From Magallana gigas (taxonomy: Eukaryota), in NCBI RefSeq assembly GCF_963853765.1, contig NC_088854.1, positions 39,866,001 through 39,930,000 on the forward strand: a stretch of DNA of 64,000 nt. Direction: 5' to 3'. The translations under genes were made by a program, and so were the position numbers. Positions 45,508 to 59,226 of this stretch are shown one piece after another (positions within the stretch are counted from its first letter, which is position 1; each line of letters starts with the position of its first letter). Below the pieces are notes generated by a model that searched no databases, was not told the DNA's origin, and saw nothing but the letters and a program-made list of their open reading frames with translations.

Positions 45508-46891
45508 TTAGAGGTGCTCATCTAAACTGTCGCCTCTGAGGTGCTTCCGGTACGATCTTGTTGAACCCAGTTTACTTTCCTTAAAGCTCCCTTTTAATGG
45601 AATTCTCGAAGTGTCGCCACAGCTACAATTTGAGGAAGAAAATAAAAATGTGATTTCATTTTTAAAAAAATAAAAATAAATTCATGATTTTCGTTGTTTG
45701 GTTGATTCACAAGTCAAAATGTGCGCGACGTCTAATGGATTTCCCCCCATATTTATGGTTTCCATCAATTTACAAATCCGCAAAAATGAGTTGAACATTT
45801 ACTTTGTCCAAAAATAATTATTCAATCGAACACGATTCCGCACTATGCAGCTTTAACCTCACTGCACACAATAATTGATCGTATAATATAACAAACCTTT
45901 CATCATCATCAGTGTTGTCCGTCAAACTCTTCAATTCCTGTAAAAATCAAAACCCTAATGAATTGAATAAGTTGATTAAAAATAAATAATATACAATAAT
46001 TTGATGAGGTTTAAAGCGGTTAAAAATGAAGAAAAAAACATTCATTTTTATAATATCTAATTTAAAAAAAAAGAAATAACATGCCATCACGTTATGTAAC
46101 ATTTAATCATCTAACATGTTATCATATATATTTTATGTCACCTTTTCTTTCTTATTAGTGTTGTCGTCGTCATTTTCTTCGTTTTCTCCTTTTATTAACT
46201 CAGAAGATGTCGTGCTGCAGCATGCTTTGTTAAAAGCCTACACATATTCATGAATAATATACAATAATATGATGAGGTTTAAAGCGATTAAAAATGAAGA
46301 AAAAAACCCATAAATTTGTATAATATCTAATTTAAAAAAAAAGAAATAACATGCCATCACGTTATGTAACATGTAATCATATAACATGTTATATATTTTG
46401 TGTTACCTTTTCTTTCTTTTGAGTGTTGTCATCGTCATTTTCTTCGTTTTCTCCTTTTATTAACTCAGAAGATGTCGTGGAGCAGCATGCTTTGTTAAAA
46501 GCCTACACATATTCATGAACAAAATTATAGTACAGTTTGGCAGTATACCTCATTCATGTGTACAATCAAGCAGACTGGTCATCAGACCTTATTTCTTTAA
46601 AGCTTTATTATAGTAAAAACTGGTGAAATTACTAACTTTCATCCAATTTAAATGTTCTTCCTCTTTGTTTTCCTCTTTGGCTTGAATTCTAAAACTGTCA
46701 TATAGATAAAAAAAATATGATGATTTGAACTCCCTTTCTATACAAAAACCAAATTTTTCAATGACCCTATCATCAACTTACTGGAAGGTTCGGCCAGGAA
46801 TCTGTACATCAAACCCGTAGGTTTTAGTGGATATAACTGAAACTTCACCCTCTTGAAGATTGACCACATTTAACGTATTCTATAACATTGA

Positions 46892-46975
<84 letters not shown>

Positions 46976-49641
46976 AAAAAAGCAACACTTCTTTTATTAT
47001 ATTTGTACCGGACNNNNNNNNNNNNNNNNNNNNNNNNNNNNNNNNNNNNNNNNNNNNNNNNNNNNNNNNNNNNNNNNNNNNNNNNNNNNNNNNNNNNNNN
47101 NNNNNNNNNNNNNNNNNNNNNNNNNNNNNNNNNNNNNNNNNNNNNNCTGATTTTAGGATAGAGGTATAAGAATTGATTTACGCTAATTATATTTCATATG
47201 TGCATTTACTTCTGTTTTGTTTGGGAGAGCGTATGAAAACTTTCCAATTTCCACACTGACAAAACGCCTGAAAAAAAATAAAGAATACCACGTCATAAAA
47301 TGCCCTAATTTACCTTATGATTTCTGAATATACCACTTCTAAAAACTACATCACAACTTAACGTACTCATTCCAGACTTTGACTTTCGCATTTCCCCTTT
47401 TATCAAGGTAGCCTTGCTTTACTACCAAAGATTTGGGGATGGTTTTCCGTTTGATGCTCTTTCGAATAACATCATCTGGTAACACCTGATGAAATCCGGG
47501 TCTTTGGGGTGGGACTCTATTCAAATATAAAAGTCGAAATTGAAAGAAGTCAATGTCTTTGACTGTTCTTTGATAAAATCCTTATGAAATATCCATACCT
47601 GTCAGTTATAGCAGTTCTTATGCACTGAAAAGAGAAAATGAAATATTTGTTATGAAACCATAAAATAACACAATAATTCAATTATTTTTATTCTAGGATT
47701 GCGATAAGACAACTAATATAGAAATATTCCAATGCATTGCATGTGTGAGCATAATAGCATTCCTTTTCTGTCCTTTAATCTACAAGTTTGAAGTAATGAC
47801 TTGGTAGAGGATATTGTTTTGTGGCATACTTTATGTTTCTTAAATTTTAGCTTAAAATTATTCCAGTTACTACTTTAATTTTAAGAGGGTGCATTTTGAT
47901 TTCACTTTTAATAACTCGTCATTTTATTACATTCGAGCTTTTTTTTCAGAGCCTTACAAGAGTAAATTGATATTATTGTTTGTGATTGCCGTAAGCGTAT
48001 CTGTTCACAAAAACAACTTACTTTTATCCAGTTATCCCGTTCTTCCTCTTTGTCTCGTACAGAGTCTGGAATCTGAAAACTAGACACAGTCTCTATCATT
48101 GAAAGCTATTCAATATATAAAGCTTATTCCATAAAAAGTTGACCTAAATAAAAAATTATATCTTTTGATTTTACCTGTAAGTTCTTTCCGGTACTGTGAC
48201 GCTGAACTTGTCTGTCCCTATGGCCTCCACATGACATTCTATAATAGGCTCAAGTTTAATCGTTTTCTGAAATCAAAATTATTTTAAATTTTAAAAAAAT
48301 ATATATTTGCAAAAGATGGGTTTTTATTCACTTTAAATTATTTCAAACTCTTTGAATGATTTTACCTCTGATTGCTCTGGGTAATAGATTAAAAGTCCTC
48401 GTTTGATGCACACTTTTCGCCTAAAAAAAAGGAGGCTCACTCACCAATTTCTGTGCAAATCTTTTTTGTCAAAATACTTGATCATGTATGGTTAACTCTC
48501 TTGATATGAAATCAACGTTTCTGAGATCATGTATATAATTACATAGTATATGCTACTGGGTTAAAGGTGGTTAGCCTTTTACACTTTTTGCGATAGTATC
48601 TATTAATCATGACAAGATATAATCGAATGACCGATTGTTCCTTTCTTGAGAAAAGTTATCAGGCAAATCACAGGTGGAAAATAAAATAACGATGTATTTT
48701 TATAACTGATCTTCAACACTTTTCTTACTTGTAACATTTTCATTTCATTTCACATAAAATTGCTGTATTTTCTGGTTATAACGCATATCCAAGGCTAAAT
48801 TGTAACATTCTTCAAGGATTATGCACAAGTTATTTTTTAAAAATAATTGTTAAATACCTGGCCCATTTTTCAAGTACGGTATTTCCCTTTTTATTCAAAA
48901 ATCCTTCTTTTATTATGTAAGATCCTTCTTCTGTAAATCAAAAATATTTATCTGAAATATTGGGTTTTTGTGTATGTGCGTGTAAATTATAAATAAAAAT
49001 GAAAAGGCTAAGAAGACCTTCCTGTCGACTTACTTGAGTAGATGCTAGGTTTGATCGCGTGTTGTTCTTTGATTGCTTCAATGTTTTTTAGGGTTTCCAC
49101 TTTGCTCTGGGAATTTTCAGCCGACAATATTTTTTCAAGTGGCCCAATATTGACTGCTATTTGTAAATCATTCTGTACGAGAATAGACATAGGTATTGAT
49201 ACTTGCTTTACTCATTTCAACACCTCAATCACCACTATATCTTACCTTGCTACAGACTGTAAGATCTTGTACCATGCACGATTGTTTAACCTCTCCCTTC
49301 CTAATATATCTTACATGCCCTTCTTTAACGTTAATCTGAAACCAAAGAAATATGTTTTGATTAAAACATATTGTGCTGAAACAGCACAAATCGGAAACAA
49401 AAGAAATTAAACGTTTTTCTGCTTTATAGGGCTGAAACAAAACTGTGTTGGAACTAGCAAAATACACTATAAATTCACTTAATTGTTAGAAATTATTTAT
49501 CAATGGATTTTTTGACAAAGTCGCCTGCTAATCTTGATTTTAGAAAAAAAATACATATACATATACCTTTAAGACAACACGTTGTCCTGTCGATTCCAAT
49601 AAAGAAAATTCTTGGACATAATCACCTTCATCCTCCGCCAT
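45508..49641 (-). CDS. Uncharacterised protein with an N-terminal PH-like domain and two canonical PH domains, paralogue A (405 or 437 aa)
   Basis: Exons 49641-49567, 49335-49246, 49172-49034, 48930-48858, 48420-48366, 48266-48175, 48079-48022, 47624-47599, 47516-47367, 47267-47210, 46879-46782, 46688-46637, 46502-46407, 46237-46142 (duplicate), 45937-45897, 45622-45508; all GT-AG and in frame. PH signatures IIKEGFLNKKG...KWARR...EERDNWIKCI and VKQGYLDKRG...WNERF...EEHLNWMKAF. Confidence 0.85.
45985..46515. repeat. Recent ~265-bp tandem duplication carrying a whole 96-nt exon
   Basis: Two near-identical units (~45985-46252 and ~46253-46515), each with acceptor, exon and GT donor. Confidence 0.92.
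46895..46970. repeat. (TA)n microsatellite next to an assembly gap
   Basis: Direct observation; other (TA)n runs occur near 55537-55606, 57700-57739 and 58445-58503. Confidence 0.95.
47014..47146. other. Assembly gap (N run) inside an intron of PH paralogue A
   Basis: Run of N. Confidence 1.
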
Positions 49642-57742: not shown

Positions 57743-58439
57743 AGACCTCTGAGGAACACCGGTGGTTAAAATAAAATAAAAAGACATACAATACACATCA
57801 TAAATCAGTTAATTTTCTTTCATTAATTAATTTATTAGAAGAAATATTAGGAGGGGTATTAAACACGACAATCTTATTGTTTGAGAATAAATTTTAAAAG
57901 TAGAACATATACATGTATATACGTAAAATTTCAACGAGCCCAACATTCCTTGCATAATTTACACTTCGAAAGAAATAAAAGTAAATATTTCATACCTGGC
58001 CCATTTTTCAATCACAGCATTTCCCTTCTTTATTAAATATCCTTCTTTTATAGTACGAGATCCTTCATCTGCAATTTAAAAAAACTTAAAAATTAATCAA
58101 ACTGTTTGGAAAATGCTCTATGTTTTGATTGTTTAAGAACACTCTATACACTAGTTTCTAATTAAAAAAAATATTGTAAGGGGGTTGTTTTTGCTTTCAC
58201 TGTATCTAGTTGAATTCAGCAAATAATACTTGAAATTTTAACCAATATAAAATCATCAAAGACAAAAAAGTTTTGATAAATACTTCATGCCTCAACTTTC
58301 TTAGTTTTGGAAAATGCACACAATTTAAAAAGTTTTCCAAAAATTCGTTATCTTACTTATAGTGCAAATTTTGGCATGCACCGTACATTGCAGCAGGTAC
58401 CTTTTTTTCATTATATACATACATATGACAGATCACTAG

Positions 58440-58507
<68 letters not shown>

Positions 58508-59226
58508 GTGTACTCAAAAGTACCCTTCAATCAGGGTGCACGCAGTGTGAAAATGGACCTTTAATTATACAGACTTACTTAAGGGGATATTCGGTTTAGG
58601 TGTGTGTTGCTCTGTGACCTCTTTGATGTTTTTTAGTATTTCTTCCTTAATCTGAGAATTTTCAGCAGACAGAATTTTCTGCTGATGTTCAATGTTGACA
58701 GCTATTTGTAACCCATCCTGCAAGAGATATTTTTATGCATAGAGACACTAGCTGGTATCTGATTGAAACCGAAGTTGATGCATCATCACTTAACAAACGA
58801 TACGTAATTAGTAGATAACCTTGTTGGTGACAGTTAGGTCCTTTATCATACACGAGTGTTTAACCTGTCCTTTCCTTATGTACTTTACGTTCCCTTGTTC
58901 CGAGTCAATCTGAAACAAGCACACAGTTGAACTTTATCCTACATTTACTCTTTAATGGGTTCTTGAAATAGATTCATAATTTTCCTCGTTGTTTAGTTAA
59001 CATGTACAATGCATTTCATATTCAAATCTCAGTACACTTAATAAAACAACAAAGATGGTGATAATGAGTGGATTTTTTTTTTAAATAAGGGGGTCTCTTG
59101 ATAATCTGGATCAGGAAGTTATAGATAATATATATACATTAACAAATGTACCTTTAAAATAACACGTTGTCCTCCTGATTTCCATAAAGTGAATTCTTGG
59201 ACAATGCCATCATTTCCTTCCTCCAT
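52380..59226 (-). CDS. Uncharacterised triple PH/PH-like domain protein, paralogue B (408 aa, 15 exons)
   Basis: Exons 59226-59152, 58909-58820, 58717-58579, 58068-57996, 57493-57439, 57319-57228, 57129-57072, 54352-54327, 54234-54088, 54000-53943, 53815-53718, 53610-53559, 53439-53344, 52635-52595, 52506-52380 (1227 nt). Intron phases are the same as in paralogue A; exon sizes are identical except exon 9 (147 vs 150) and the last exon. Confidence 0.85.
54426..54546. repeat. Long hairpin of an unclassified non-autonomous DNA element
   Basis: ATTGTGTGATTTTATATTTGCTTTATCCAAC ... GTTGGATAAAGCAAATATAAAATCACACAAT around GCGAGGCTTGCCGAGC. Confidence 0.8.
55720..55879. repeat. Long hairpin of an unclassified non-autonomous DNA element
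   Basis: ~78-bp near-perfect arms around GCGCGTAGCGC. Confidence 0.85.

What the first reader, a model, noticed from the sequence alone, without database searches (positions are those of the whole stretch)
45508..59226. Tandem pair of intact, uncharacterised triple-PH-domain genes hidden in tiny exons
Seen: two minus-strand genes of 15 homologous exons (26-150 nt) with identical phases, no frameshifts or stops, and divergent proteins (exon 1: 14/25 identical; exon 11: 25/32). Architecture: PH-like N-terminal domain, PH, Pro/basic linker, PH, then an acidic and basic tail; no catalytic domain is visible. Known: a KxG...W-x-x-R beta1-beta2 signature (here LNKKG...KWARR and LDKRG...WNERF) marks phosphoinositide-binding PH domains. 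Inference: a lineage-specific family of multivalent lipid-sensing adaptors kept by purifying selection. I cannot match it to a named family.
Basis: partly seen in the sequence, partly recalled or inferred. Interest (0 to 1): 0.75.

Follow-up and report, generated by a model that had tools for sequence, protein, structure and literature searches.

The report
Formin-less triple-PH genes beside oyster formin
Two intact, expressed neighbouring oyster genes encode small proteins made of three PH-fold modules, and they are oyster-specific copies of the front end of the adjacent PH-domain formin gene that have lost its actin-assembling part.

Summary
Two minus-strand genes of 15 GT-AG exons (26-150 nt, identical phases) encode proteins of 410 and 407 aa that are 62% identical. 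RNA contigs from several oyster studies confirm the gene B splice junctions, including the 26-nt microexon. The assembly gap lies in intron 10 and does not touch the coding sequence. The genome is Magallana (Crassostrea) gigas. The genes are not hidden: RefSeq already models them as "uncharacterized" LOC105340862 (A) and LOC105333946 (B).

Each protein has an N-terminal PH-fold domain (AF2 pLDDT about 85, VIA Z 10-12), two Pfam PH domains and an acidic/basic tail. No catalytic domain is present. A-versus-B dN/dS is 0.25. Relatives were found only in oysters (Magallana, Crassostrea, Saccostrea, Ostrea).

The new point concerns the gene directly upstream, the PH-domain formin PHCF (LOC105340863). 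Its N-terminal PH-PH module matches the family profile at 120 bits and has the same intron positions and phases. A and B are therefore formin-less partial duplicates of PHCF, with one extra PH domain from an internal duplication.

Function is inferred, not shown. The proteins are most likely phosphoinositide/membrane-binding adaptors, possibly acting in the PHCF pathway. The finding is of moderate interest: a new variant of a known kind.

The parts
52380..59226 (-). Gene A (M. gigas LOC105340862), 15 coding exons, 410 aa: PH-fold N-domain, PH1, linker, PH2, tail
Evidence: Model built. The Logan transcript-derived protein cluster P0010 (118 members) and XP_011445394.1 have the same architecture, including the exon-15 tail.
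45508..49678 (-). Gene B (M. gigas LOC105333946), 15 coding exons plus one duplicated exon. Isoforms are 407 aa, or 439 aa when both exon-13 copies are included. Exon 1 starts at 49678 and the ATG is at 49641.
   Evidence: Translations are identical to XP_065932623.1, XP_065932624.1 and XP_011435491.3. Splice junctions are seen in RNA contigs and reads of X1, X2, X13 and X19.
49952..49979 (-). End of an upstream 5'UTR exon of gene B. It is spliced across a GT-AG intron (49951-49679) to exon 1. The 5' limit of this exon was not determined.
   Evidence: Joint 49677/49952 in X1 and X13. The sequence read shows GTAAGT at the donor and AG at 49680-49679.
54327..54352 (-). 26-nt microexon 8 of gene A. 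It encodes the end of the PH1 C-terminal helix.
   Evidence: Flanked by CAG and GTAAGT and homologous to the gene B microexon.
47599..47624 (-). 26-nt microexon 8 of gene B
   Evidence: Joints 47516/47599 and 47624/48022 are present in X1, X13 and X19.
46407..46502 (-). Exon 13a of gene B, a 96-nt in-frame copy that is included in some transcripts and skipped in others
   Evidence: Joint E12-E13a is seen in X13 and joint E13a-E13b in X1 and X13. It is skipped in X1, X2 and X19.
46142..46237 (-). Exon 13b of gene B, the duplicated copy present in every RNA contig that reached it
   Evidence: Joints 46236/46636 and 45936/46141. Sequence read.
47014..47146 (.). Assembly gap inside intron 10 of gene B, next to a (TA)n microsatellite at about 46890-46975
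   Evidence: Exon 10 ends at 47210 and exon 11 starts at 46879. RNA contigs join them directly.
45623..45896 (-). Intron 14 of gene B, with a weak GTTTGT donor. It is retained in the RNA contigs that were laid. Read-through would end the protein 27 codons after exon 14.
   Evidence: Contiguous contigs cover 45350-45936 (X1), 45631-45936 (X2) and 45595-45926 (X13). The spliced form is shown by P0001 and RefSeq.
61796..64000 (-). FH2-domain exons of gene C, the PHCF formin LOC105340863. The gene continues beyond the window end to an ATG at window-equivalent position 70454.
   Evidence: Pfam FH2 hits on exon translations. The N-terminal exons lie in L004. The letters match Cg LOC105340863 in the FH2 alignment of PMC5047451.

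Best explanation
Shown:
- These are two expressed, intact tandem paralogues in Magallana gigas: A = LOC105340862 and B = LOC105333946.
- Each encodes a non-catalytic protein of about 410 aa: a PH-fold N-domain, PH1, a Pro/basic linker, PH2, and an acidic then basic tail.
- They are homologous to the N-terminal PH-PH module of the PHCF-type formin gene (LOC105340863) that lies directly upstream on the same strand. The N-domain corresponds to the formin's first PH and PH2 to its second PH. Intron positions and phases are the same.

Inferred history:
- The 5' part of the formin gene was duplicated in an oyster ancestor, without FH1/FH2.
- The five-exon PH unit was then duplicated internally, which gave PH1.
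- The whole gene was duplicated again in the Magallana lineage, giving A and B.
- Exon 13 was duplicated again in gene B.

Inferred mechanism:
- The invariant basic beta1-beta2 residues of PH1 and PH2 bind acidic membrane lipids (phosphoinositides).
- The protein would then act as a multivalent membrane-associated adaptor.
- It plausibly occupies the same membrane sites or ligands as the PHCF formin's targeting module.
For: Gene models and phases:
- Built. They are identical to RefSeq isoforms.

Transcription and splicing:
- RNA contigs from three studies plus poly-A raw reads confirm the splicing. All raw-read first mates lie on the + strand, as expected for minus-strand RNA in common stranded libraries.

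Domains:
- Pfam PH scores 51.8 bits over two stretches. PH1 alone scores 37.7 bits.
- The N-domain AF2 model has pLDDT 80-88, with 7 strands and a C-terminal helix.
- It matches solved PH domains by Foldseek at TM 0.6-0.69 and by VIA at Z 10-12.
- Its first and third ESM Atlas shape hits are chordate FH2/PH formin clusters.

Selection:
- dN/dS is 0.25. In the 8-sequence alignment, 16 PH1 beta1-beta2 residues are invariant.

Link to PHCF:
- FH2 exons lie upstream.
- The family HMM against the gene C N-terminus scores 120 bits, E 4e-39 with Z=1. The N-domain scores 42 bits and PH2 79 bits.
- Exon sizes and phases match: 90/90, 55/58, 98/98.
- PH1, PH2 and the gene C PH are 34-41% identical to one another, with shuffle Z of 21-36.
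- Gene C is Cg LOC105340863, classed as PHCF with a pair of N-terminal PH domains (PMC5047451).
- In Saccostrea, an 1180-aa FH2 protein gene lies directly upstream of the 413-aa orthologue, on the same strand.

Copy number and timing:
- The only copies in the 564-Mb genome are at this locus.
- A and B group together, apart from C. virginica, Saccostrea and Ostrea.
Against: - No lipid-binding or localisation data exist, and no paper mentions either locus.
- The strict 3-phosphoinositide motif (K-X-Sm-X6-11-R/K-X-R-Hyd-Hyd) is fully met only in PH2 of gene A. PH2 of gene B and most orthologues have N in place of the first basic residue. PH1 has K where the motif requires R.
- PH1 and PH2 were modelled poorly in the full-length AF2 run (pLDDT 30-65).
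- PH2 alone scores 24.9 bits, just under the Pfam cut-off of 25.1.
- The direction of the duplication (formin to PH-only gene) rests on taxonomic distribution, not on a rooted tree.
- Absence outside oysters rests on protein databases with length and sensitivity limits. No non-oyster mollusc genome could be searched.
Confidence: 0.7

Rival explanations
1. These are independent lineage-specific lipid-sensing adaptors. Their descent from the formin is only historical. They act in pathways unrelated to PHCF, much as tandem-PH adaptors such as TAPP1/2 do.
For: - The architecture is non-catalytic and multi-PH, with invariant basic beta1-beta2 residues.
- The genes have their own start codon and 5'UTR exon and produce their own transcripts.
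- The tail exon 15 is conserved across genera and has no counterpart seen in the formin.
Against: Nothing argues directly against this reading. It differs from the best explanation only in denying a functional link to PHCF. The conserved adjacency to PHCF in Saccostrea could be simple inheritance.
Confidence: 0.3
2. These are trans-acting regulators of the PHCF formin. The free PH-PH(-PH) module would compete with, or bind to, the formin and so tune its membrane recruitment or activity. This would parallel the formin-derived, FH2-less MWH proteins of arthropods.
For: - The module is homologous to the formin's own N-terminal module.
- Tandem linkage with PHCF is conserved in two genera.
- There is a precedent for FH2-less derivatives of a formin subtype, namely MWH derived from MWHF (PMC5047451).
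Against: No interaction or co-expression data exist. PHCF function and regulation are themselves unknown. I ran no complex prediction.
Confidence: 0.15
3. These are not separate genes. The exons would be alternative or read-through parts of the formin transcription unit, or decaying duplicates on the way to becoming pseudogenes.
For: - All three genes lie on the same strand with short spacing. The last identified FH2 exon is about 2.5 kb from the gene A ATG.
- An older RefSeq annotation contains chimeric proteins made of A exons 1-6 and B exons 7-15.
Against: - The reading frames are complete, with no stops, and each gene has its own ATG.
- A separate 5'UTR exon is spliced to gene B exon 1.
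- Transcript contigs of 1.4-2.1 kb encode exactly the 407- or 410-aa proteins.
- dN/dS is 0.25.
- Orthologues of 390-413 aa are conserved in Saccostrea and Ostrea.
Confidence: 0.03

Closest known systems
PHCF formins (PH domain-containing formins; Cg LOC105340863; Pruyne 2016, PMC5047451)
   Same: The N-terminal PH-PH module is homologous: 120 bits against the family HMM, with the same intron positions and phases. The two genes are chromosomal neighbours on the same strand.
   Different: A and B have no FH1 and no FH2 domain. They carry a third PH domain, inserted by internal duplication, and their own conserved C-terminal tail. They are about 410 aa, against about 1180 aa for the formin.
Multiple Wing Hairs (MWH) proteins versus MWHF formins
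   Same: The evolutionary logic is the same: a protein that keeps only the N-terminal regulatory module of a formin subtype and has lost the actin-assembling part (PMC5047451).
   Different: MWH arose by loss of the C-terminus of the only copy and has G-DID-DD domains. Here the formin is kept and a partial duplicate with PH domains was added. There is no sequence relationship between the two cases.
Tandem-PH adaptors TAPP1/2 (PLEKHA1/2) and pleckstrin
   Same: These are small non-catalytic proteins built from several PH domains plus a tail. The TAPP1 C-terminal PH is a weak sequence hit (1eaz, E 3e-5).
   Different: There is no orthology, only generic PH similarity. Pleckstrin's DEP domain is absent. 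The N-domain, the tail and the exon structure are specific to the oyster family.
ASAP1 PH domain (PDB 2da0, 5c6r/5c79)
   Same: It is the best solved-structure sequence match to PH1 (E 2e-7, 33 bits). The two share a W-x-R-R-K-[CV] beta2 segment.
   Different: ASAP1 has BAR, ArfGAP, ankyrin and SH3 domains, and none of these is present here. PH1 is closer to PH2 and to the formin's PH (34-37% identity) than to ASAP1.

Membership tests
PH domain (Pfam PF00169) | Match to the Pfam PH profile above the gathering score | tested here: met
   The whole protein scores 51.8 bits against a cut-off of 25.1, over two stretches. PH1 alone scores 37.7 bits. PH2 alone scores 24.9 bits, marginally below the cut-off.
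PH superfold (N-terminal domain) | Seven-stranded beta sandwich capped by a C-terminal helix, with structural matches to solved PH domains | tested here: met
   The AF2 model has pLDDT 80.4, strands at 9-72 and a helix at 76-93. Foldseek against PDB gives TM 0.6-0.69 to the PH domains of ORP11, CERT, Exo84, ARAP3 and ASAP1. VIA gives Z 10-12. There is no Pfam hit by sequence.
3-phosphoinositide-binding PH domains | Beta1-beta2 motif K-X-Sm-X(6-11)-R/K-X-R-Hyd-Hyd (recalled from the literature, Isakoff et al. 1998) | tested here: inconclusive
   PH2 of gene A (K-Q-G...W-K-E-R-F-V) fits the motif. PH2 of gene B and most orthologues have N at the first basic position. PH1 (K-K-G...W-A-R-R-K-V) has K where the motif requires R.
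PHCF formins | FH2 domain (with FH1) that clusters with the PHCF subtype | tested here: not met
   Pfam finds only PH in the A/B-type proteins. FH2 is found only in the upstream gene C. A and B are therefore not formins.
PHCF formins | N-terminal pair of PH domains homologous to those of PHCF | tested here: met
   The family HMM against the gene C N-terminus scores 42 bits for the N-domain and 79 bits for PH2. Intron positions and phases are shared. Atlas shape hits include chordate FH2/PH formin clusters.
ADAP / centaurin-alpha | N-terminal ArfGAP zinc finger followed by two PH domains | tested here: not met
   There is no ArfGAP hit in Pfam. The N-domain has a PH fold, not a Cys4 zinc finger.
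Pleckstrin | PH-DEP-PH architecture | tested here: not met
   There is no DEP hit. The inter-PH segment is a Pro/basic linker of about 25 aa.

The most novel reading that the evidence does not exclude
The oyster PH-only proteins are dedicated trans-regulators of the PHCF formin. They would act as free copies of its own membrane-targeting PH-PH module and compete with it, or dock onto it, so setting where and when this poorly understood formin subtype assembles actin. This would be a second, independent case, after MWH/MWHF, of a formin spawning an FH2-less regulator.
Probability: 0.15. Interest if true: 0.65.

Novelty: new variant of a known kind. Interest (0 to 1): 0.45.

Why it matters
PHCF is the least studied animal formin subtype. 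It is absent from placental mammals, insects and nematodes, and its N-terminal PH-PH module has no known ligand. The oyster locus provides natural, separately expressed copies of that module. They are short and soluble-sized, which makes them convenient reagents for finding what the module binds.

The locus is also a clean, datable example of how a new gene family forms by steps:
- partial tandem duplication of the formin gene;
- internal duplication of a five-exon domain unit;
- duplication of the whole gene;
- duplication of one exon that is now alternatively included.

Intron phases are preserved at every step. For oyster biology, it gives a first functional hypothesis for two "uncharacterized" loci.

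Tried and rejected
- Pfam on single exon translations gave nothing because the pieces are too short.
- The spliced proteins have no reference. I therefore reached database copies through an exhaustive profile search with exon 3 and worked with those protein ids.
- That search and two word-indexed searches found only oyster proteins. The formin itself was missed there because it is longer than the allowed length range.
- Full-length AF2 gave a poor model for PH1 and PH2. The AFDB-cluster search returned only generic multi-PH proteins at low TM.
- The ESM Atlas feature search gave only generic PH clusters scoring below 0.9.
- hhalign of the family against the single large gene C open frame aligned only 23 columns. 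The spliced gene C N-terminus was needed.
- Exact look-ups of the O. edulis and C. virginica isoforms found no contig.
- Literature searches for the locus and protein accessions found nothing.
- I rejected ADAP, ARAP, pleckstrin and TAPP orthology. I also rejected the pseudogene reading and the reading that the exons belong to the formin gene.
- I ran no complex prediction, because I make no firm binding claim.

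
Full report
**Observation.**
- The region is AT-rich animal DNA with about 32% GC.
- Translating the minus strand and comparing the two halves showed 15 collinear pairs of short conserved blocks, with introns that do not align.
- I fixed the exon borders at GT-AG sites.
- Gene A runs from 59226 to 52380 and encodes 410 aa. Gene B runs from 49641 to 45508 and encodes 407 aa.
- Both have 15 coding exons of 26-150 nt, identical phases, and no stop or frameshift.
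- The proteins are 62% identical.

**Assembly gap and transcripts.**
- The gap at 47014-47146 lies in intron 10 of gene B, beside a (TA)n run.
- I laid four oyster RNA data sets from four studies on 45350-51349.
- Junctions E1/E2 through E13b/E14 appeared in two or more runs, except where noted next. Both sides of the 26-nt microexon were among them.
- The E6/E7 joint was laid three bases off with non-canonical ends. I attribute this to a synonymous variant, which is my interpretation.
- The E10/E11 joint next to the gap was not listed directly.
- A 396-nt X1 contig equals exactly part of E13b plus E12, E11, E10 and part of E9. An X13 contig leaves 57-58 nt between E11 and E9. So exons 10 and 11 are joined directly and in frame, and nothing coding is lost in the gap.
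- All raw-read first mates lie on the + strand. This is what minus-strand RNA gives in common stranded libraries.
First, exon 13 of gene B is duplicated. The copy at 46237-46142 was in every contig that reached it, while the copy at 46502-46407 was included in some contigs and skipped in others. Second, contigs from three studies run unspliced through intron 14, which has a weak GTTTGT donor.
- Exon 15 is nevertheless real. It is present in transcript-derived proteins and in RefSeq models, and its sequence is conserved in Saccostrea and Ostrea.
- A 5'UTR exon is spliced to gene B exon 1 across a GT-AG intron at 49951-49679.

**Identity.**
- An exhaustive profile search with exon 3 returned a 407-aa protein that is gene B.
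- Cluster look-up shows the genome is Magallana gigas. The carrying contig is 61,469,542 bp, the same length as the contig holding this window.
- Gene B is LOC105333946. My three isoform translations are letter-identical to XP_065932623.1, XP_065932624.1 and XP_011435491.3.
- Gene A is LOC105340862.
- All database names are "uncharacterized protein" or "PH domain-containing protein". No paper in the library mentions the loci.
- The genes are therefore annotated but unstudied. They are not hidden.

**Architecture.**
- Pfam finds PH at residues 108-200 and about 234-330, and nothing else.
- With a family alignment, AF2 models the N-terminal 100 residues confidently, with pLDDT 80-88. The fold is seven strands plus a C-terminal helix.
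- That model matches solved PH and PH-like domains by Foldseek at TM 0.6-0.69 and by VIA at Z 10-12.
- The "triple-PH" description therefore holds.
- The closest solved sequence relative of PH1 is the ASAP1 PH domain (E 2e-7). PH2 hits the PH domains of PLEKHA5/6, ARAP2 and pleckstrin-2 weakly.

**Selection and distribution.**
- Nei-Gojobori dN/dS between A and B is 0.25. It is 0.14-0.20 in the three domains and about 0.5 in the linker and tail. dS is about 0.97.
- Homologues were found only in Ostreidae: M. gigas, M. angulata, C. virginica, Saccostrea cucullata and Ostrea edulis.
- In the family tree, A and B types group together, apart from the C. virginica, Saccostrea and Ostrea proteins. 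This places the A/B duplication in the Magallana lineage. The B branch is the longer one.
- A six-frame search of the whole 564-Mb genome finds family exons only at this locus, plus one weak match just beyond the window.

**The neighbouring formin.**
- The weak match led to a third gene, gene C, on the same strand directly upstream of gene A.
- Its exons inside the window (61796-64000) and beyond it hit Pfam FH2. A large exon carries poly-proline FH1-like runs.
- The letters match Cg LOC105340863 in the FH2 alignment of Pruyne 2016. That paper classes it as a PHCF formin and states that mollusc PHCFs have a pair of N-terminal PH domains (PMC5047451).
- I assembled gene C's first eight exons.
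- The A/B family HMM matches that N-terminus at 120 bits (E 4e-39 for one sequence). The N-domain scores 42 bits and PH2, with the start of exon 13, scores 79 bits.
- Intron positions and phases coincide, and several exon lengths are the same: 90/90, 55/58 and 98/98.
- PH1, PH2 and the formin's PH are 34-41% identical to one another, with shuffle Z of 21-36. PH1 has the same five-exon structure as PH2.
- In Saccostrea, an 1180-aa FH2 protein gene sits directly upstream of the 413-aa orthologue on the same strand.
- The first and third ESM Atlas shape hits of the N-domain model are chordate FH2/PH formin clusters.
- PHCF with PH-PH-FH1-FH2(-PH) is ancient in Holozoa (PMC5628938), whereas the PH-only family is seen only in oysters.
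- The likely history is therefore as follows. The 5' part of the formin gene was duplicated. The PH unit was then duplicated internally. The whole gene was duplicated in Magallana. Exon 13 was duplicated in gene B. A related species' B-type protein has three such copies.

**Mechanism (inferred).**
- There is no catalytic domain.
- The beta1-beta2 basic residues are invariant from Ostrea to Magallana. In PH1 these are K109, K115, K116, K123, R126, R127 and K128. In PH2 they are K236, K242, K249 and R254.
- This fits binding of acidic lipids. The strict 3-phosphoinositide motif is fully met only in PH2 of gene A.
- I propose a multivalent membrane-associated adaptor. It may share ligands with the formin's targeting module.
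- A regulator or decoy role towards PHCF is possible but untested.

**Verdict.**
- The origin is not obvious and appears unreported. They are FH2-less derivatives of the adjacent PHCF formin.
- The finding is of moderate interest.

Noticed in passing
database proteins P0008, P0017, P0018, P0019 (XP_0343002xx, older C. gigas annotation): These isoforms are chimeras. Residues from exons 1-6 are 96-99% gene A and the rest is 99-100% gene B. They could reflect a hybrid haplotype from unequal crossing-over, an assembly collapse, or mis-joined RNA evidence. No loose end at gene B exon 7 was seen in the four runs laid.
   Followed up: partly
window 45350-45936: In run X1 the 3' terminal contig, which contains retained intron 14 plus 3'UTR and extends more than 500 nt below 45350, has a word depth of 726. 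The upstream exons have about 80-90. This could be 3' bias or an extra 3' transcript.
   Followed up: no
window 48175-48178 / 48079-48082: The E6/E7 joint of gene B was laid three bases off, with GA..TG ends. This is best explained by a synonymous TAC/TAT variant in the sampled animals, which lets the aligner shift the cut. The canonical GT-AG sites are at 48174 and 48080.
   Followed up: partly
window 46890-46975, 54396-54427, 55537-55608, 57700-57745, 58412-58520: (TA)n microsatellites recur in introns of both genes. One of them abuts the assembly gap.
   Followed up: no
L004 about 2470-3400 (window-equivalent 66470-67400), in an intron of gene C: A unit of roughly 127 nt is repeated about three times. 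It gives repeated open frames that start with the same roughly 40 residues. It is probably a tandem repeat or a mobile-element fragment.
   Followed up: no
window 3392-4426 (+): An intronless 344-aa ORF has the look of a rhodopsin-type GPCR, with seven hydrophobic segments and an NPxxY-like motif near the end.
   Followed up: no
window 59227-59289 and 49642-49711: About 65 nt upstream of the two ATGs are 73% identical between A and B. This is conserved 5'UTR within exon 1.
   Followed up: partly
gene A isoforms P0022/P0023 (375 aa): These RefSeq isoforms skip the 41-nt exon 14. That shifts the frame in exon 15 and gives a different short basic C-terminus.
   Followed up: no
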